A stretch of DNA of 63,072 nt, filler included, from Octopus bimaculoides (taxonomy: Eukaryota): assembly GCF_001194135.2 (NCBI RefSeq). It is 5 parts of 5 records of this genome, joined end to end, with 100 filler letters (N's around TTAATTAATTAA, not from the genome) between each part and the next. Parts side by side here need not be neighbours in the genome. Positions count along the whole stretch, not along the records: positions 10,126 to 22,069 come from NC_068999.1; 4 more parts are not named here. One strand, written 5' to 3'. This document shows positions 12,559-22,069 of the stretch, one piece after another. The notes under the pieces were generated by a model. It saw only the letters and a list, made by a program, of their open reading frames with translations, ran no database searches and was not told where the DNA came from. The translations under genes and the position numbers were made by a program. Each line of letters begins with the position of its first letter. Position 1 is the first letter of the stretch.

Positions 12559-13921
12559 ATTCACAGAAAACAGTCCAGACAAAAAGCAGCTGGATCAGTT
12601 ATCTGGTAAGCTGAATAGAGAATTATCACTGGATCATTTAGCAAATCAATTAAGCGAGAATATTGAACCTCTGTCAAATCGTTTAATTGGAAAGCGTTTT
12701 CTGGATCCACTGGCCAGTGGTCTTATTGGTAAAAGATATCTTGATCCATTAGCCAGTGGACTACTTGGAAAAAGAAATTCAGACGTTAACACTAGTAAAA
12801 ATCATGCAGGAAAGAGTCAAAAAGATGGAATCTTGAGTCAAACAGGGAAACAACATTTTGACCTGTTAGATAGAGAACTTATTGGTAAACGCTATCTTGA
12901 CCCATTAGCTAGTGGTCTTATTGGCAAACGCTATCTAGACCCTTTGGCTAGTGGTCTCATTGGTAAAAGATATCTTGATCCATTGGCTAGTGGACTTCTT
13001 GGTAAAAGAGATACACACCTTGATTCGAAAAGCGATGACTATCAAGGGACGGATGACAACACATCTAATGATCTTGCTATTAATGATGCTGGAAAACGTT
13101 ATCTTGATCCATTGGCTAGCAGTATCATAGGTAAACGACATCTTGATCCATTGGCCAGTGGACTAATTGGTAAACGATATCTTGATCCTTTGGCTAGTGG
13201 TCTCATCGGTAAACGATATCTTGATCCATTGGCTAGTGGTCTCATTAGTAAACGATATCTTGATCCATTAGCTAGTGGTCTTATTGGTAAACGATATCTT
13301 GATCCATTGGCTAGTGGTCTTATTGGTAAACGATATCTTGATCCATTGGCTAGTGGTCTCATNNNNNNNNNNNNNNNNNNNNNNNNNNNNNNNNNNNNNN
13401 NNNNCGGTAAACGATATCTTGATCCATTGGCTAGTGGTCTCATTAGTAAACGATATCTTGATCCATTAGCTAGTGGTCTTATTGGTAAACGATATCTTGA
13501 TCCATTGGCGAGTGGTCTCATCGGTAAACGATATCTTGATCCATTGGCTAGTGGTCTTATTGGTAAACGATATCTTGATCCATTGGCAAGTGGTCTTATT
13601 GGTAAACGATATCTTGATCCATTGGCAAGTGGTCTTATTGGTAAACGATACCTAGATCCATTGGCCAGTGGACTAATTGGGAAACGATATCTTGACCCGT
13701 TGGCTAGTGATCTTATTGGAAAACGGTATCTTGATCCATTAGCCAGTGATCTTATTGGCAAAAGAGATGTGAACCCCAACTCTAGTAAAGAGAATTCTGA
13801 AAATAGCCGAAGTAATGTGATCTTGGATCCAACGACCAATGGCTCCGCTATGAATAAACGGTATCTTGATCCACTGGCAAGTGGAATCATTGGAAAAAGA
13901 CAAAATGAAAAGTTGGAATAA
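12559..13921 (+). CDS. Last coding exon of a multi-copy neuropeptide precursor, LASGLV/LASGLI-amide family (YLDPLASGLIamide and variants); 5' exon(s) with signal peptide not identified
   Basis: Open frame with 22 visible 39-nt units encoding (Y/F/H)LDPLAS(G/D/S)(L/I)(I/L)-G/S-KR: dibasic convertase sites and amide-donor Gly, separated by acidic/polar spacers. Synonymous third-position variation among units supports coding selection. Preceded by a TTTTATTTTTCAG acceptor; ends at TAA 13919-13921. A 42-N gap lies at 13363-13404. Confidence 0.95.
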
Positions 13922-14110
13922 TCTGATGAAAACATTTATCTACTTAATGGTCTTGAGGATATTCGTGAAATGAGAAGTGTATATGCTTAAAAATGGATCG
14001 ATTGATTTGACAGTGATGTTTGATAATATTTGTTTTCTCTCTATTTCAAATGGGACAATTTTCATTGACATCAAAAAACTAAAAGTATAGATAAAAGCAA
14101 AACAAAAACG

Positions 14111-14116: not shown

Positions 14117-15017
14117 ACAATCTACAAAACTTTATAAAACAGTAAAGATAAAAGTATCATCTCCGAAACAAATATATCCAACATTAATAGGGAATGGTGT
14201 TTGAAAAAGAAAAGCTGGAAATCGGTTATTTTCTTTAATGGTTCTTTGTGAAGTAGCAACTGTGATTTTATCGTTCTCTTTTACACAAAACAGGCTACCT
14301 AAAACATACTGTAAACAATTATTTGTGAATAAAACCTTTTCTTTTCTCCTCTTCTCCCATGACTTTCTTCTGTTATTCCATTTTAGCATATTGAACAGTG
14401 GTGTCACATTAAGTCGCAACCTTTGTTTAACGCTCTTTCTTTATATATAGTTATTTTATGTCCATGAGTGCATATGTCTATGTACATATGTGTGTGTATA
14501 TAGATGTATATATATATTCATGTAGAAATTTATGTGTATGTGTATGTGCTTGTGTTTGTGAATGTAAGTTCAAATACACTTAAACTAATGCAATACAAAC
14601 TTATTTCATCAAAGCGAAATAATTTAATCCTTGGGAGTGAACAATGGCTAAACATATAATTGGTGCTTTGACTTTGTTTAATTTATTAAACAAACCAGAA
14701 GAATGGAACTTAAAAACATAAAGTATGGAATATTTGTCATAAATTACCTTATAAGTTCACTGTTGAACTAAAGAAGCTACTATTGTTTGGCCACTTAATA
14801 TGTAGGCATTGTTACATCGAAAGTGATTAGAATAGATGTCTAGGAAAAATCAATGGAACGAAGTGGTAACTTCATATGTCACCGAAATATTATAGAAATT
14901 GATCTAGCGGAGAAAACAAGTTAGGAAGCAACTTAAATACATTACAAGAGCTACATAATAGACAGGCACATATGAATTACAGTACAATTTTAATTCCTCA
15001 AATTCATTTAAATGATA

Positions 15018-16170
15018 CAGTAGTGGCCAAAATTTTTAGAATTCACATCAGTATATTAATTACATTCCTTTATTTTTAATGACTTCAGCACATCTCCGTC
15101 TACAGGATTTGACTATTGTTCTGACGTAATTTTATTCCATCTTTCCTGAAGTTTTCCTCCACAAAATCGTAACATCCGTAGGTCAGTGATCTTTGATCTT
15201 ATCACCAAGTATCTTCCATAAGTTTTCAATGGGATTAAGGTCATGGCTCCAAGCTGGCCAACGCATCACAGCAAGATTTTCAGCTTCAAACACCTTCTTA
15301 ATTATTTTGGCACTGTGACATGGCGCATTATCCGGCATAATGATAGGCTGGCGAGTTGGAGATGACGTCATTGCTGGCACAACATGCTGCAGAACGATGT
15401 TTTTGTATATGGTTGCATTCACATTACCATAAATCTGGATCAAAGGCCCAACACCTGCTGCAGAAATCATTCCCCACACCATCTAGCCCCTACATCCAAA
15501 CTTCACTGATTTTTTCACGCATTTAGCGAGCAATCTTTCACTTTTACGATGTCTCAAGTATTTTCTACCATCAGAGCCAACCAAATTGAACTTGCTTTCG
15601 TAACTGAGGAACATATGTGACCAGTTGTCGTACATCCAACGTACGTACTCGTTGGCAAAGCCTAACCTCGCTATTTGTCTCTTCATACTGATGTGAGGTT
15701 TAGTGGCGGGGAAATGGGCATGAAGTCCGACTTCCTTCAAATGACGAGCCACAGTCTTTCGAGACACATTCATTCCGTAATCACGATTTACTTGGCGAGA
15801 ATCGAAGCGATCTCTTAACGTCAGCCTCTGAATCACACAGTTTTGCCAAACACTTGTTTTCTGTGGTCTTTCTCGTTTTTCTAATGATACAAACGAATTT
15901 GTTTCTTCACAAAGCTTGAGTATTCTTGAAACAACATTCTTTGATCTGTTATTTTCTCTGGTGATAGCAGAAATTGCCATTCCTTCTTTTTTTCAATGTG
16001 ACCACTCGCTTTCTGAGGTGTTCAACTTTACATCAGCTTCCCTGATTGTTAATTCACTATTGTTCAATATAAATCTTTGCTCTGTTAGGTCAACTTAGTT
16101 TACATTGGTCGGAGTGTACGTTTACTTTTTGAATTTTACACCATACGTTCTCTAATTCTGGCTACTACTG
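15018..16170 (-). mobile_element. Degenerate Tc1-family DNA transposon (DD34E) with both TIRs
   Basis: Minus-strand transposase pieces 15483-15980 and 15183-15482 (SYESKFN, VWGMISAAGVG, DNAPCH, DLNPIENLW). Imperfect TIRs CAGTAGTGGCCAAAATT / CAGTAGTAGCCAGAATT flanked by TA (15016-17, 16171-72). In-frame stops; the first catalytic Asp is replaced by Tyr. Confidence 0.9.
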
Positions 16171-16289
16171 TATATTTGAACTTGTCCAGTGACGCATGCG
16201 TAAACGGAAAGAATGACTTTCAAATGTCGGCATCAAGTAAACATACAAACACACACACACATGCACACGCACACACACACACACTCATG

Positions 16290-16340
<51 letters not shown>

Positions 16341-16342
16341 TT

Positions 16343-16611
16343 GCAGCGCGGAAGATGTTTGTAAGCCATTCAAGAACACACAAAAACCGTTAGTTTCACT
16401 TCAACATTTGATTTTCATTTGTGTCAAAATATTTTCATTGCTTTGAAACCGCGACCTGTTCACTGACAAAACTTGGTGCTAGTTTTGTTAGCGAACAGGT
16501 CGCTGTTTCAAAGCGACGAAAGTATTTTGACACAAATGAAAATCAAATGTTGAAGTGAAACTAACGGTTTTTGTGTGTTCTTGAATGGTTTGCAAATGTC
16601 TTCCACGCAGC
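16343..16611. repeat. About 270-bp foldback (MITE-like) hairpin
   Basis: Arms 16343-16471 and 16479-16611 are reverse complements with roughly 90% identity around a loop of about 7 nt. Confidence 0.85.
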
Positions 16612-17110
16612 AATTATTTTTGTTTCAGCACACGATCTCAGTTCAAGTCACTTGCTATGCAAGTACATCTCCGTAATCTTCTTATGTAAAATAGACCTGT
16701 GTATGTGTGTATTCGCTTTTCACGCGGAAACGACTGCGTGAATTGGTTCCATACTTGGGATGCTCATGTTAATTTAACCTCGGATACTTAATAGGGTCTT
16801 CAGTTTATTTTTTATTAAAAATAAATACTATTGCTTTATATATATGATTCACTTTATGAAAGTTTCTCAATGTCAGCTTCCGGTATTGACGTAGCAATGG
16901 TGACATTTTCCGTTTTCATTTGCAAAATTTCTCACTCTCTATTTTGATGTTTTCATTTCAATTTTTAATGCCCTGTTTGCAAACAACTACGACAAATTAC
17001 TGAAAGAAATATTTACTAATTTCACAAATTTAAATATTCGGTACAAGAGCAGTTATTTATACTATTTTTTCCTTTTATGTTTATTTCATTCATTGTTTGC
17101 AATGTTCTCT

Positions 17111-17182
<72 letters not shown>

Positions 17183-17245
17183 ACGTGTATTTTTGTTCGT
17201 TCGTTTGTATACATTTATGTATGTGTGTGTGTGTGCTTGCAAGAC

Positions 17246-17277
<32 letters not shown>

Positions 17278-17579
17278 TGAGTCAGTCAGTCAAAAGGTGT
17301 GTTGTCATGTATACGTACAGACATAAATACATATGCATACATGTTTTTGTATGTATGTGTGCGTGTGTGTGCGATAGAGAGACAGAGAGAGAGAATATGA
17401 TGTCTAAGTGATATTCACTCTCTCTATATCTCTCTCTCTCCCTCACACACACATACATACATACATACATACATACAAAAAAAGACATATGCATATGTAT
17501 TTATGTATGTACGTATACATGACTACACCCCTTCTCTCTCTCACACACAAACACGCCCATTTCATCTGATGTTTGATAC

Positions 17580-17647
<68 letters not shown>

Positions 17648-18011
17648 TGGTTCTGGGTTCAGTCCCACTGCGTGGAACCTTGGGCAAGTGTCTTCTACTA
17701 TAGCCTCGGGCCGACCAAAGCCTTGTGAGTGGATTTGGTAGACGGAAACTGAAAGAAGCCCGTCGTATATATGTATATATATATATATATATATGTATGT
17801 GTTTTTGTGTCTGTGTTTGTCCCTCCAGCATCGCTTGACAACCGATGCTGGTGTGTTTACGTCCCCGTAACTTAGCGGTTCGGCAAAAAAGATCGATAGA
17901 ATAAGTACTAGGCTTCCAAAGAATAAGTCCTGGGGTCGATTTGCTCGACTAAAGGCGGTGCTCCAGCATGGCCGCAGTCAAATGACTGAAATAAGTAAAA
18001 GAGTAAAAGAG
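17648..18011 (+). mobile_element. SINE family A, 5'-clipped
   Basis: Starts at GGTTCTGGGTTCAGTCCC; colinear with 5950-6362 to the GTAAAAGA tail. Confidence 0.9.
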
Positions 18012-18166: not shown

Positions 18167-18291
18167 GTGAGCTTATATCTGGAGACAACCTAAAGAAGCC
18201 TTCATAACAGAGCTACCTCCATGCTTCACAGTAGAAGGCCAAACGGTTAAAGTTGAAGGCTTCTTTAGGTTGTCTCCAGATATAAGCTCAC
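18167..18291. repeat. Perfect 38-bp inverted repeat with 49-nt spacer
   Basis: GTGAGCTTATATCTGGAGACAACCTAAAGAAGCCTTCA at 18167-18204 and its exact reverse complement at 18254-18291. Confidence 0.92.
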
Positions 18292-18429
18292 CCTGAAGTG
18301 GCAGAAAGGGTGAATGATTATTCATGGGAGATTACAATGTTCCATTGAGTCACTAACCACTTCTGATAGTCTAGATACTATTTTCACGGTTATAAATATT
18401 GAAGAGACAGGATAAGTTTAGCAATTGCA

Positions 18430-18745
18430 GCCCTCTCGTTATATCTAGTTTTATGGAGCTCAGGGTAAACGGTTTTGGTTGGCAAATTGATAGTTTAGCT
18501 CTGCTGTCACTTTTGTTTTCGATTGGTTTTTGACACAACTCGTTTCATTATTCTGCAGACCCTCTATATGCCTTCCGTCCAGAATTATATTTGCCGGAGC
18601 TGGTTTTATCTTGGTTTTTAAATGCCAACATAATTTCTCCAAACATTAAACAATTCAATAGTTTTATTAACTGAAGTTCTAGCCGTCCGCGCTTCAACAA
18701 TTGGTCCACTTTGGAAATCAGAGAGATCACGTATTTTAACTTATC
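18430..18745 (-). mobile_element. Tc1-like transposase N-terminal remnant
   Basis: Frameshifted minus-strand peptides DLSDFQSGPIVEAR..SVNKT, KTSSGKYNSGRK and KTKVTAELN resemble Tc1 paired-HTH regions. Confidence 0.55.
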
Positions 18746-18926
18746 AGTAACAATATCTGCCAGAAGAAAGGGGGAAACAGGCTGCTATGTCATTAAGAAC
18801 AAGGTATACATAATGAATATGAACACACTAAAGCAGCATTGAATTTGTCATATTGCCAATAGAAAATATAGTTAAATAAAAGTTGTTTCAATTATTTTGT
18901 ACATCTGTATACGCACGTACGCGAGC

Positions 18927-19005
<79 letters not shown>

Positions 19006-19489
19006 CACACACACACATACACACGCACGCGCACGCACACACACACACACACACACACACAAACAAACACACACACACAAAGGAATATGAATGGACAGCT
19101 CAAATTATGCTGCGTATGCTTCCATGACTATTTCTTTAATGATACATAATATGCATTTCATTTGGTGATATTGAACATTTTAGCACTAAAAGCATTCTGC
19201 GAAAAAATATGCTAACAAAAATATATATATTGTGTTCAGTGGGGTGGTTTAGAAAAGGAAGTTAATACAAGGATCCCAAGTGAGTGAGGAGATATTTTGT
19301 ATTGCAGCCAATCAATCAGAGTAGTAGTAGTAGAGTTCAGAAACTGCCAAGGGAGTGGCTAATTCTGTCTTTCCTCTCATATGATAGATTTATTTACCGG
19401 ACAATAATTTATCAGTAATTTGTGCAATAAATTATCCAACTATCAATGCAGCAGAGCCTAAGGGTAAATTTAGATAACTACACAATATA

Positions 19490-19665: not shown

Positions 19666-19854
19666 ACACAACACAATATGATGTTGTCACCGCTACTTAG
19701 ACGGCAATTTTAATGATAATAGAAATAAGGTAATGAAAACGGTCCTAGGATACACAAAACGTACATACATACTTACATCCATATAGACACATACATACAC
19801 GCACATATATATGTGTATATACAATGTACACACACACACACACACTCACACACC

Positions 19855-19897
<43 letters not shown>

Positions 19898-19904
19898 GTT
19901 ATTC

Positions 19905-20289: not shown

Positions 20290-22069
20290 TTTCATAAAAA
20301 TTCGCCATTGGAGGCGTTACAGAGAGGGGACAAACAAGGAATGATAAACATAAGGGGGAAATAGCTTAAACGTTTTTTTTTTAATTTTACAATTAAAAAT
20401 ATGATTAAAAATTAATTTTAAAATTAATTTAAAAATTATACACAAGAAATCATTGCGTTTCGCAATGAGGCAGCTAGAAGGAAGGCACCCGACCATCTTG
20501 GTAGAACTTTTGCTTCCCAAATTAACCTCACTTGGTGCGAATCGCACTCAGCTTGCGCTCAACAGACTTCCATCTTTTCGAAAACATATCCGTGACAGGC
20601 ACTTCCTCTCCAGCCTGATCTTACTACTGAGGTGGTAACTAAAAAAAGTTAAACAACCCTTTGCCGGAGACAAAGGTACCTGTCACTATACCTTTCACAC
20701 ACGTCTTCCATACTGTTTCTTTCAGTATGGCTACTACGCAGAAAAAACAGGCCTTCCTTTCCCTGTTAAAGAAAGGAGATGGTACAGTCTCGATGATAGA
20801 CTCAGCTGATAGCTGTATTCTTCCTATCACTGACAACAGTTGTTCTGCAAAAGCTATCAGTCCCGACAACTCCGAACACTCCACGAATGTGTGCATTTCC
20901 CTATCTTGCCCACATCTCGGGCATGTCGGAGAGACGGCACTTCCGTGCCTTGACAGCTTGTCGCGAACAGGTAATGCCGCTCGGAAACATTGCCAAGCCA
21001 GGAATTTCTTGTAATTATCCAGATACTCCGGCCCGAACAGGCTGACCAACTGACTTTCATCATAGCCCAGGGTCTTCCCCAAGGCGTCTTCTGACATAGA
21101 TTCCACTAACCCGCTATAGAAATCCGCGATGGAACTCCTGCTGCCGGCATTGCCCGCCCGAGAGAGTAGCTGGAGCGCCTGATGGCACTCCAAATGCCAG
21201 TCTCCCAGCTTAGGTTTCTGCTTGATCCATGTATCAATGTCCGTTAAGGACACTAACTGGTGAAGGTAGAACCGAACGTGCAGTGATCACACCTGTTCTC
21301 CATCCAGGTAAAGCCAGAGGTGCCTCAATCTTAACGCGAATTTTCGCATCCTCAGCCAAGGCATCCCTAGCCCACCCTTTAGCGGTTTCTGGCAGCAGAC
21401 AGAGCGCTTTACAAGTGGTTTTCCTCCTTTCCACAAAAAGCGGAAAAGGATTCTCTCCAACTTGTTCAGCCACAAATCGAGGCAAGGCACCACGGTCAGG
21501 CGGTAGGTAATTACTGATGCTATAAACATCTGCACCACCTCCGCCCTTCCTAGCAAGGATAACGCACGCCCAGACCACGTCTGGATTAGAGCAGTCACTT
21601 TGCTGGCTACCTTGCTCCAGTTTTTCTCTATCTGGATGTTTGGACCTATCCAGACTCCGAGCAACTTATCAGGACCTTGCGTCCAACACCCCACGACGTT
21701 ATTGGACGCCATCTGCTTGCCCCTCAAAGTGCCGAGTTGCAAACCGACCGACTTGTCCTTGCTAACCTTTGCTCCTGCCACCGCCTCGTAACTTTTGATG
21801 GCCTTTTCCACCACTGGAATCTGGCCCTCATCCGCCACGATGATGGAGATGTCATCTGCGTACGCTGTAGCTCTCCTTCCACACCATAGATCATGCGGAG
21901 CGCCCCCTAGCGCCTCCAACTTCCACAGCAATGGCTCCAGAGCCAACACATACAGAAGCGGGGATAGGGGACACCCCTGACGAATTGAACGCTCGATCCT
22001 GAACGGTTTCGAAAAGAACCCGTTCACCTTGACGACAGACTTGATGTCGCTGTACAAAGCAGAAATCCA
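20290..22069 (-). mobile_element. L1/Tx1-clade LINE, 3' portion (RT domain to 3' tail), cut by an assembly gap
   Basis: RQGCPLSPLLYVLALEP, AYADD and KLLGVWIG RT motifs, then CPRC...H...C zinc knuckle. One frame runs 22069-20639 with a single TGA at 21287; a likely frameshift in the A7 run near 20641. GC-rich relative to flanks. Confidence 0.92.

What the first reader, a model, noticed from the sequence alone, without database searches (positions are those of the whole stretch)
12559..13921. Highly amplified LASGLI-amide neuropeptide precursor: 22 visible peptide units
Seen: 11 complete YLDPLASGLI-GKR units plus one cut by the gap, and the variants FLDPLASGLI, HLDPLASGLI, YLDPLASGLL x2, YLDPLASSII, YLDPLASGII, YLDPLASDLI x2 and YLDPLASGLIS x2. 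Established: KR is a prohormone-convertase site and a C-terminal Gly is converted to an amide by PAM; LASGLV/LASGLx-amide precursors are described in gastropods, bivalves and cuttlefish. To my knowledge the family's receptor and function are poorly characterised. Inference: a high-stoichiometry signalling system with a dominant decapeptide amide and minor tuned variants.
Basis: partly seen in the sequence, partly recalled or inferred. Interest (0 to 1): 0.8.

Follow-up and report, generated by a model that had tools for sequence, protein, structure and literature searches.

The report
Octopus LASGLI-amide neuropeptide precursor exon
This is the main coding exon of an octopus gene whose protein is cut into about 22 copies of one small signalling peptide (YLDPLASGLI-amide); the gene and its peptide family are already published, but what the peptide does and which receptor it acts on are still unknown.

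Summary
Window 12559-13921 (+) is one open exon, from an AG splice acceptor to a stop codon. The gap (13363-13404) sits in register. There are 29 unit bases before it and 10 after, so abutting the flanks gives a perfect in-frame unit. True copy number is 21, 22 or 23+, and every option stays in frame.

The precursor is not new. With the gap closed, the translation matches Octopus bimaculoides XP_014768501.1 at 436 of 439 residues. That protein is printed in Supplementary Figure 2 of PMC8514136 (2021) as a member of the mollusc LASGLI/V-amide family, formerly called "buccalin-like". Twenty-two copies is within the family's range (Aplysia 26).

The signal-peptide exon lies outside the piece. Differences between units fall mainly at third codon positions, and most leave the amino acid unchanged, so the peptide is under selection. 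Processing at KR sites, Gly-to-amide conversion and action on a receptor are inferred. A 2025 paper states that the family's function is unknown.

Verdict: a real, correctly read, already known gene of low novelty.

The parts
12540..12558 (+). Pyrimidine-rich tract and AG splice acceptor (AG at 12557-12558) of the intron before the peptide exon
   Evidence: Sequence read directly: aatatgttttatttttcAG|A. The published protein continues upstream with MKMWKITNISLVTLTLLHT-V, which is not encoded anywhere in the piece.
12559..13921 (+). Last coding exon of the LASGLI-amide precursor gene. 12559 is the third base of a split Val codon (GT|A). The frame runs 12560-13918 and the stop TAA is at 13919-13921.
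   Evidence: Open frame. With the gap closed, 436 of 439 residues are identical to the printed XP_014768501.1.
12560..12697 (+). N-terminal propeptide spacer (FTENSPDKKQ...), ending in a degenerate unit NIEPLSNRLIG-KR (12659-12697)
   Evidence: Translation. The unit keeps E-P-L-S-x-x-L-I-G-K-R.
12698..12775 (+). Unit block 1: FLDPLASGLI-GKR and YLDPLASGLL-GKR
12776..12892 (+). Spacer NSDVNTSKNHAGKSQKDGILSQTGKQ followed by the degenerate unit HFDLLDRELIG-KR (12854-12892)
12893..13009 (+). Unit block 2: 2 x YLDPLASGLI-GKR and 1 x YLDPLASGLL-GKR
13010..13099 (+). Acidic spacer DTHLDSKSDDYQGTDDNTSNDLAINDAG-KR. It also ends in Gly-Lys-Arg.
13100..13765 (+). Main array of 16 visible units: SII, H-variant, G, S(no Gly), G, G, G(cut by gap), S(no Gly), 6 x G, 2 x DLI. 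It contains a 4-unit (156-nt) higher-order repeat. Positions 13207-13311 are identical to 13405-13509.
13363..13404 (.). Assembly gap of 42 N inside a unit. The flanks are in register (29 + 10 = 39 nt).
   Evidence: The published protein reads exactly one unit across it.
13766..13861 (+). Spacer DVNPNSSKENSENSRSNVILDPTTNGSAMN-KR
13862..13900 (+). Last unit, YLDPLASGII-GKR
13901..13921 (+). C-terminal tail QNEKLE and stop codon
14111..14116 (+). First AATAAA downstream of the stop, a candidate polyadenylation signal. A second lies at 14328-14333. This is inference only.
   Evidence: Such hexamers are common in this AT-rich sequence (29 found, about 20 expected by chance).

Best explanation
Window 12559-13921 (+) is the peptide-bearing terminal exon of the Octopus bimaculoides gene for the LASGLI/V-amide neuropeptide precursor (RefSeq protein XP_014768501.1). 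The first exon lies outside the piece and supplies a 20-residue signal peptide that sends the roughly 459-residue preproprotein into the secretory pathway.

In dense-core vesicles, prohormone convertases would cut after each Lys-Arg. Carboxypeptidase E would remove the basic residues. Peptidylglycine alpha-amidating monooxygenase would convert the exposed C-terminal Gly to an amide. The products would be about 14 copies of YLDPLASGLI-NH2 ([M+H]+ 1060.60), six amidated variants, and two non-amidated YLDPLASGLIS.

The released decapeptides most likely act as neuromodulators or hormones on a peptide receptor that has not been identified, most probably a G-protein-coupled receptor.

Shown here: the exon, the units, their selection pattern, the identity with the published protein, and family membership by sequence. 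Inferred: processing, amidation, secretion, and receptor action.
For: - Exon anatomy and unit count.
- Selection pattern: 824 third-position pairwise differences against 58 second-position ones. There are 889 differences in synonymous codon pairs against 275 in non-synonymous ones. LDPLAS, K and R are invariant.
- Identity: with the gap closed, 436 of 439 residues match the printed O. bimaculoides XP_014768501.1, with the same number and order of units.
- Classification: PMC8514136 places that protein in the LASGLI/V-amide family.
- Independent homologues with signal peptides and xFDSLASGL[IV]-GKR units: Dreissena polymorpha E=1.8e-20, Lymnaea stagnalis 2.7e-21, a Logan contig 3.4e-24. The representative library gave 98 relatives.
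- Peptides from the scallop family member were reported in a combined transcriptome and proteome study (PMC5996578). [quoted passage not shown]
Against: - No expression or peptide evidence for the octopus gene could be examined here.
- Exon 1, with the signal peptide, is not in the piece.
- The gap leaves copy number uncertain by one or more units.
- In oyster, LASGLVamide peptides were 'virtually not detected' by LC-MS/MS of adult nervous tissue (PMC4200219). High copy number therefore does not guarantee abundant peptide in adult CNS.
- Two units lack the amidation Gly.
- The exact protein was not found in the protein collection by exact look-up, so the identity rests on the machine-read text of a supplement. 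That text differs from the window at 5 positions.
Confidence: 0.93

Rival explanations
1. It is the octopus buccalin / allatostatin-A-type precursor. That was the older label ('buccalin-like'). On this view its peptides act on the AST-A/buccalin-type receptor.
For: - The family was first described as buccalin-like, with the same precursor layout (PMC8514136).
- That paper found no buccalin precursor in O. bimaculoides, Sepia pharaonis or Architeuthis dux, yet found a buccalin-type receptor in each (Obi XP_014776263.1).
Against: - Buccalins end in F-x-G-G-[LI]-amide. Nautilus has GVDSSFFSGGL-GKR. The octopus units end in A-S-G-L-I-amide with no aromatic residue.
- Bivalves and gastropods have both families side by side, so they are paralogous or unrelated, not the same gene.
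- The authors excluded the family from buccalins.
Confidence: 0.06
2. It is best seen as an amidated offshoot of the wider pedal-peptide / orcokinin / FCAP-like 'xLDx[LI]GSxL' peptide group, not as an isolated mollusc-only family. It would then share that group's type of receptor.
For: - An exhaustive HMMER search grades from LASGL[IV]-GKR precursors into non-amidated ones with units YLDGIGSSLL-HKR, MLDPIGSSLL-KKR and PFDPLGSGFI-SKR.
- The Lymnaea homologue has YLDPLASSLI-EKR, which is 9 of 10 identical and has no Gly.
- Scallop FCAP2 peptides such as MLDRLGSGLI are 7 of 10 identical to the octopus peptide.
- Echinoderm PP/OK peptides are defined by an N-terminal aromatic residue and an Asp-(Pro/Thr)-Leu core (PMC9793003). 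YLDPL has both.
Against: - E-values between repeat proteins are inflated by the repeats and by the shared KR sites.
- PP/OK peptides have an aromatic residue near the C-terminus and are not amidated. The octopus peptide ends in Leu-Ile-amide.
- Short peptides converge easily.
- The cluster analysis in PMC6425005 lists LASGLIamide as a mollusc-restricted family.
Confidence: 0.25
3. It is a non-coding 39-nt minisatellite, or the true product is the antisense ORF 13099-13935 (-) with its (PLANGSRYRLPIR)n repeat.
For: An antisense ORF of 278 aa stays open through the array. It shares its third codon positions with the + frame, so the third-position excess alone does not choose between the two strands.
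Against: - The + frame is open for all 454 codons, including the four non-repeat spacers. The antisense frame closes once it leaves the main array.
- All homologues and the published protein match the + frame.
- Gly-Lys-Arg processing sites, the AG acceptor and the stop fit only the + reading.
Confidence: 0.01

Closest known systems
Octopus bimaculoides XP_014768501.1 (LASGLI/V-amide precursor printed in Suppl. Fig. 2 of PMC8514136)
   Same: 436 of 439 aligned residues are identical. The 22 units, their order and the spacers are the same, and one unit spans the gap.
   Different: Five one-residue differences: two I/L and three single-residue indels. They are probably errors in the machine reading of the PDF, because neighbouring sequences in that file show similar glitches. 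They could instead be allelic. The published protein also has the signal peptide MKMWKITNISLVTLTLLHTV, which the window lacks.
LASGLI/V-amide (LASGLVamide) precursors of bivalves and gastropods (Crassostrea MMDSLASGLV-amide, Mytilus PFDRLASGLV-amide, Mizuhopecten, Aplysia PFDELGSGFI-amide, Biomphalaria PFDEIGSGLI-amide, Dreissena)
   Same: They share a multi-copy precursor of roughly 10-residue units with the core D-x-[LI]-[AG]-S-G-[LF]-[IV]. Each unit is followed by Gly-Lys-Arg, and acidic spacers separate the blocks. Copy numbers are 9-26.
   Different: The octopus unit begins Tyr-Leu-Asp-Pro and ends Ile-amide, not Val-amide. Its units are more uniform (14 of 22 identical) than in scallop or oyster. 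Two units have Ser in place of the amidation Gly.
Lymnaea stagnalis unnamed protein (P0002) and related gastropod precursors (P0008)
   Same: YLDPLASSLI is 9 of 10 identical to the octopus peptide. They have repeated units flanked by basic pairs.
   Different: There is no Gly before the basic site (…LI-EKR, …LI-KKDDGEKR), so the products would be free acids.
Buccalin / allatostatin-A type precursors
   Same: The precursor architecture is the same: many short amidated peptides with x-[LM]-D near the N-terminus and GKR sites. The family was historically labelled 'buccalin-like'.
   Different: The C-terminal signature F-x-G-G-[LI]-amide is absent. The two families coexist in other molluscs.
FCAP2-type and pedal peptide/orcokinin-type peptides
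   Same: They share the x-L-D-x-L-G/A-S-G-L-I core. Scallop MLDRLGSGLI is 7 of 10 identical. They also share an aromatic or hydrophobic N-terminus and the Asp-Pro-Leu motif.
   Different: Those peptides are not amidated. PP/OK peptides carry an aromatic residue near the C-terminus.

Membership tests
LASGLI/V-amide neuropeptide precursor family (Mollusca) | Many tandem copies of a roughly 10-residue peptide with the core [LI]-[AG]-S-G-[LF]-[IV] | tested here: met
   There are 22 units. Of these, 18 have L-A-S-G-[LI]-[IL], 1 is cut by the gap after L-A-S-G-L, and 3 are S-I-I or D-L-I variants.
LASGLI/V-amide neuropeptide precursor family (Mollusca) | Each peptide is followed by Gly (the amide donor) and a dibasic Lys-Arg cleavage site | tested here: met
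   19 of 21 complete units have GKR. The post-gap flank also supplies G-K-R to the cut unit. Two units have SKR.
LASGLI/V-amide neuropeptide precursor family (Mollusca) | N-terminal signal peptide | tested here: inconclusive
   It is not encoded in the piece. The printed XP_014768501.1 starts MKMWKITNISLVTLTLLHTV, which is hydrophobic and joins exactly at the exon boundary. No signal-peptide predictor was available.
LASGLI/V-amide neuropeptide precursor family (Mollusca) | Significant sequence similarity to accepted members | tested here: met
   Dreissena 1.8e-20, Lymnaea 2.7e-21, Logan contig 3.4e-24. 28 representatives have E<=1e-10. The protein is listed as a family member in PMC8514136.
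LASGLI/V-amide neuropeptide precursor family (Mollusca) | Mature amidated peptides present in tissue | not testable with these tools
   This needs LC-MS/MS. The expected [M+H]+ is 1060.6037 for YLDPLASGLI-NH2.
Buccalin / allatostatin-A | C-terminal F/Y-x-G-G-[LI]-amide (molluscs) or Y/F-x-F-G-L-amide (arthropods) | tested here: not met
   The units end in A-S-G-L-I-Gly and no aromatic residue lies in the C-terminal half. Compare Nautilus GVDSSFFSGGL-GKR.
Pedal peptide / orcokinin type | Aromatic residue near the N-terminus and an Asp-(Pro/Thr)-Leu core | tested here: met
   Y-L-D-P-L is present in 20 of 22 units. The criterion comes from PMC9793003.
Pedal peptide / orcokinin type | Aromatic residue near the C-terminus and a non-amidated C-terminus | tested here: not met
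   The C-terminus is Leu-Ile-Gly-Lys-Arg, which is aliphatic and amidatable.

The most novel reading that the evidence does not exclude
Coleoid cephalopods (octopus, cuttlefish, giant squid) may have lost the true buccalin gene while keeping a buccalin/allatostatin-A-type receptor. PMC8514136 reports this pattern: the precursor was 'not identified' and the receptor is present. In that case the 22-copy LASGLI-amide precursor could have taken over as that receptor's ligand. A family that is an orphan elsewhere would then have a receptor in cephalopods.
Probability: 0.08. Interest if true: 0.55.

Novelty: already known. Interest (0 to 1): 0.15.

Why it matters
The gene itself is already in RefSeq and in a 2021 paper, so the window adds nothing new about its existence.

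The open question is the family. LASGLI/V-amides are one of the few widespread, high-copy mollusc neuropeptide families with no receptor and no known function. The published hints are high expression in oyster pediveliger larvae and up-regulation in pre-spawn oyster ovary.

Octopus would be a good species for deorphanising it. Its precursor yields essentially one dominant peptide, YLDPLASGLI-NH2. Coleoids also appear to lack the related buccalin gene while keeping its receptor.

A practical point for annotation is that the assembly gap lies inside a 156-nt higher-order repeat. The copy number in this assembly should therefore be treated as 22 +/- 1 or more.

Tried and rejected
- I searched all six frames of the piece for the signal-peptide exon (MKMWKITNISLVTLTLLHT). 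It is absent, so exon 1 lies more than 2.4 kb upstream, outside the piece.
- Exact look-up of the reconstructed full precursor in the 15-billion-protein collection, in two variants, found nothing. Identity with the RefSeq protein therefore rests on the supplement text.
- A Pfam scan of the precursor matched no family, as expected for short-repeat neuropeptide precursors.
- I tried the third-position excess as a strand test and rejected it as a discriminator. The antisense ORF 13099-13935 shares its third codon positions with the + frame. The strand was decided by the open spacers, the homologues and the processing sites.
- I considered a contig overlap at the gap. A 156-nt overlap has 4 mismatches. 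A 38-nt overlap is exact but is expected anyway between any two near-identical units. The question cannot be resolved from the window.
- I checked papers on the Aplysia buccalin receptor (PMC12509031), Biomphalaria GPCRs (PMC9114394) and Aplysia single-cell mass spectrometry (PMC9396074) for tests of LASGLx peptides and found none.
- A literal search for YLDPLASGLI in paper main texts found nothing. It appears only in the supplement.
- The bacterial promoter/terminator scan downstream of the stop was uninformative for a eukaryotic gene.
- Small ORFs at 14132-14419, 18173-18730 and 20317-20547 have no Pfam match.

Full report
**1. What is in the sequence**

Positions 12540-12558 are a pyrimidine-rich tract ending in AG. 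From 12560 a single frame runs open for 453 codons to TAA at 13919-13921. Base 12559 is the last base of a split codon.

A pattern count finds 22 units of the form xLDPLASxxx:
- 11 complete YLDPLASGLIG and one YLDPLASGL cut by the gap
- one each of FLDPLASGLIG, HLDPLASGLIG, YLDPLASSIIG and YLDPLASGIIG
- two each of YLDPLASGLLG, YLDPLASDLIG and YLDPLASGLIS

Every complete unit is followed by Lys-Arg. Tandem Repeats Finder sees a 39-nt period with 22.3 copies.

The units fall in four blocks (2, 3, 16 and 1). Polar or acidic spacers separate the blocks.

**2. More than chance, and coding**

Among the 21 complete units, pairwise nucleotide differences number 824 at third codon positions, 282 at first positions and 58 at second positions. 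Differences in codon pairs that keep the amino acid number 889, against 275 in pairs that change it. L, D, P, L, A, S, K and R are invariant although their codons vary; Ala, for example, uses GCT, GCC, GCA and GCG. The peptide sequence is therefore under purifying selection, not just the DNA repeat.

An antisense ORF (13099-13935, 278 aa) also stays open through the array. It shares its wobble positions with the + frame, so the position bias alone does not pick the strand. Four other observations pick the + strand:
- The + frame stays open through all the non-repeat spacers.
- It starts at an AG acceptor.
- It carries the Gly-Lys-Arg processing sites.
- It is the frame matched by every homologue.

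**3. The assembly gap**

The gap is 42 N at 13363-13404. The unit that begins at 13334 has 29 bases before the gap. Ten bases follow the gap before the next unit starts at 13415, and 29+10 = 39. Abutting the flanks gives GGTCTCAT|CGGTAAACGA, a perfect YLDPLASGLI-GKR unit in frame. Because 42 is a multiple of 3, the frame also holds as written.

The first 105 bases after the gap (13405-13509) are identical to 13207-13311. With the gap removed, the offset between them is 156 nt, which is four units. The gap therefore lies inside a recent higher-order duplication, the kind of place where a short-read assembler breaks.

Three options remain open:
- Abutment gives 22 units.
- A 38-nt overlap of the two contig ends is an exact match but is expected between any two near-identical units. 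It gives 21 units.
- Missing multiples of 39 nt give 23 or more units. The scaffolder's estimate of 42 is close to one extra unit.

All three keep the frame. The published protein reads exactly one unit across the gap. I could not check whether transcript data support that.

**4. Identity**

A full-text search led to Li et al. 2021 (PMC8514136). [quoted passage not shown]

Aligned with the window translation (gap closed), 436 of 439 residues are identical. The differences are two I/L and three single-residue indels. The number and order of units and all the spacers are the same. The differences are probably errors in the machine reading of the PDF, because neighbouring sequences in that file show similar glitches. 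Allelic variation cannot be excluded.

The printed protein begins MKMWKITNISLVTLTLLHTV and then continues FTENSPDKK..., which is exactly where the window's exon begins. The Val fits the split codon GT|A. That first exon is not present anywhere in the piece. The window is therefore from O. bimaculoides or a very close relative.

An exact-sequence look-up of the reconstructed protein in the large protein collection found nothing.

**5. Family and relatives**

The word-indexed protein search returned three relatives:
- a Dreissena polymorpha protein (E = 1.8e-20; SFDTLASGLI-GKR units; named 'LWamide neuropeptides-like' by NCBI)
- a partial Lymnaea stagnalis protein (2.7e-21; YLDPLASSLI-EKR and YLDGIASSLI-KK units without Gly)
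- a Logan-assembly protein (3.4e-24; HFDSLASGL[IV]-GKR units)

Counting units in the printed family members gives Aplysia 26, octopus 22, Biomphalaria 14, scallop 13, oyster 12 and mussel 10. The octopus copy number is high but within the family's range.

The exhaustive representative search gave 98 hits, 28 of them at E<=1e-10. The best ones grade from LASGL[IV]-GKR precursors into non-amidated ones with YLDGIGSSLL-HKR, MLDPIGSSLL-KKR and PFDPLGSGFI-SKR units. Scallop 'FCAP2' peptides confirmed by mass spectrometry, such as MLDRLGSGLI, are 7 of 10 identical to the octopus peptide. Echinoderm pedal-peptide/orcokinin peptides are defined by an N-terminal aromatic residue and an Asp-Pro/Thr-Leu core (PMC9793003), and YLDPL has both.

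This suggests that the family is an amidated branch of a wider xLDx[LI]GSxL group. However, E-values between repeat proteins are inflated, and the C-terminal features of PP/OK peptides (an aromatic residue, a free acid) are not met. I rate this at about 0.25.

The older 'buccalin-like' label fails on the defining F-x-G-G-[LI]-amide end.

Pfam has no model for the precursor.

**6. How it most likely works**

The mechanism follows established prohormone processing:
1. The signal peptide directs secretory entry.
2. Prohormone convertases cut after Lys-Arg.
3. Carboxypeptidase E trims the basic residues.
4. PAM converts the C-terminal Gly to an amide.

One precursor would give about 14 YLDPLASGLI-NH2 (counting the gap unit), 2 GLL, 1 GII, 1 SII, 2 DLI, 1 F-variant and 1 H-variant amides. 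It would also give 2 free-acid YLDPLASGLIS, several spacer peptides, and possibly amidated degenerate units. The GLI, GLL and GII forms are isobaric at [M+H]+ 1060.6037.

All of this is inferred. Only the sites are shown.

The target receptor is unknown. [quoted passage not shown] Stewart et al. 2014 did not detect the peptides in adult oyster nervous tissue and noted high expression in pediveliger larvae (PMC4200219).

**7. Novelty**

The gene, its protein and its family assignment are published. What remains open is the function and receptor of the family, and the window does not bear on that.

One lead is worth recording. PMC8514136 found no buccalin precursor in O. bimaculoides, Sepia pharaonis or Architeuthis dux, but found a buccalin-type receptor in each. 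LASGLI-amide could have become that receptor's ligand in coleoids. This is testable but unlikely (about 0.08). Other molluscs keep both peptide families, the C-termini differ, and the missing gene may simply have been overlooked.

**8. Surroundings**

The rest of the piece holds no other host gene that I could recognise. It contains:
- a frame-broken Tc1/mariner transposase remnant (15183-15980, minus strand; DDE_3 and HTH_Tnp_Tc3_2)
- a reverse-transcriptase fragment with a zf-RVT domain (20639-22057, minus strand, cut by the piece's edge)
- long CA/GA/TA microsatellites between about 16200 and 19900
- a perfect palindrome with 70-nt arms at the very left edge (10126-10267)

**Verdict**

The finding is already known, so interest is low.

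Noticed in passing
window 10126-10267: A perfect inverted repeat with 70-nt arms, 100% complementary and 2 nt apart, starts exactly at the left edge of the piece. It could be a foldback artefact at a contig or scaffold end, or part of a larger palindromic element that is cut by the edge.
   Followed up: partly
window 15183-15980 (-): A Tc1/mariner-type transposase remnant is split over two frames. ORF 15483-15980 matches HTH_Tnp_Tc3_2 (2.9e-11) and ORF 15183-15482 matches DDE_3 (1.8e-14). It is a degenerate transposon copy about 1.3 kb downstream of the neuropeptide gene.
   Followed up: partly
window 20639-22057 (-): A retroelement fragment. ORF 21287-22057 matches RVT_1 (2.8e-9) and ORF 20639-21253 matches zf-RVT (5.5e-7). 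It runs off the right edge of the piece. It is probably a LINE-type element with a frame break between the two ORFs.
   Followed up: partly
window 16200-16360, 17090-17830, 18880-19130, 19690-19900, 10690-10730: Long CA/TG, GA/TC and TA microsatellite tracts produce many spurious 'HTHTHT' and 'CVCVCV' ORFs in the mechanical ORF list.
   Followed up: no
window 13217-13255 and 13415-13453: Two identical units encode YLDPLASGLIS-KR, with AGT in place of GGT. They lack the amidation Gly. They sit at the same position in two copies of the 156-nt higher-order repeat, so a single G-to-A change was probably copied by the duplication.
   Followed up: yes
P0002 (Lymnaea stagnalis), P0008, P0005: Gastropod relatives carry nearly the same peptide (YLDPLASSLI, YLDGIASSLI), but it is followed by EKR or KKDDGEKR with no Gly. 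Amidation therefore seems to have been lost or gained within this peptide group. This bears on whether the amide is needed for activity.
   Followed up: partly
PMC8514136 Supplementary Table 1: O. bimaculoides, Sepia pharaonis and Architeuthis dux are each listed with a buccalin-type receptor but 'ni' (not identified) for the buccalin precursor. This is a receptor without a known ligand in coleoids.
   Followed up: no
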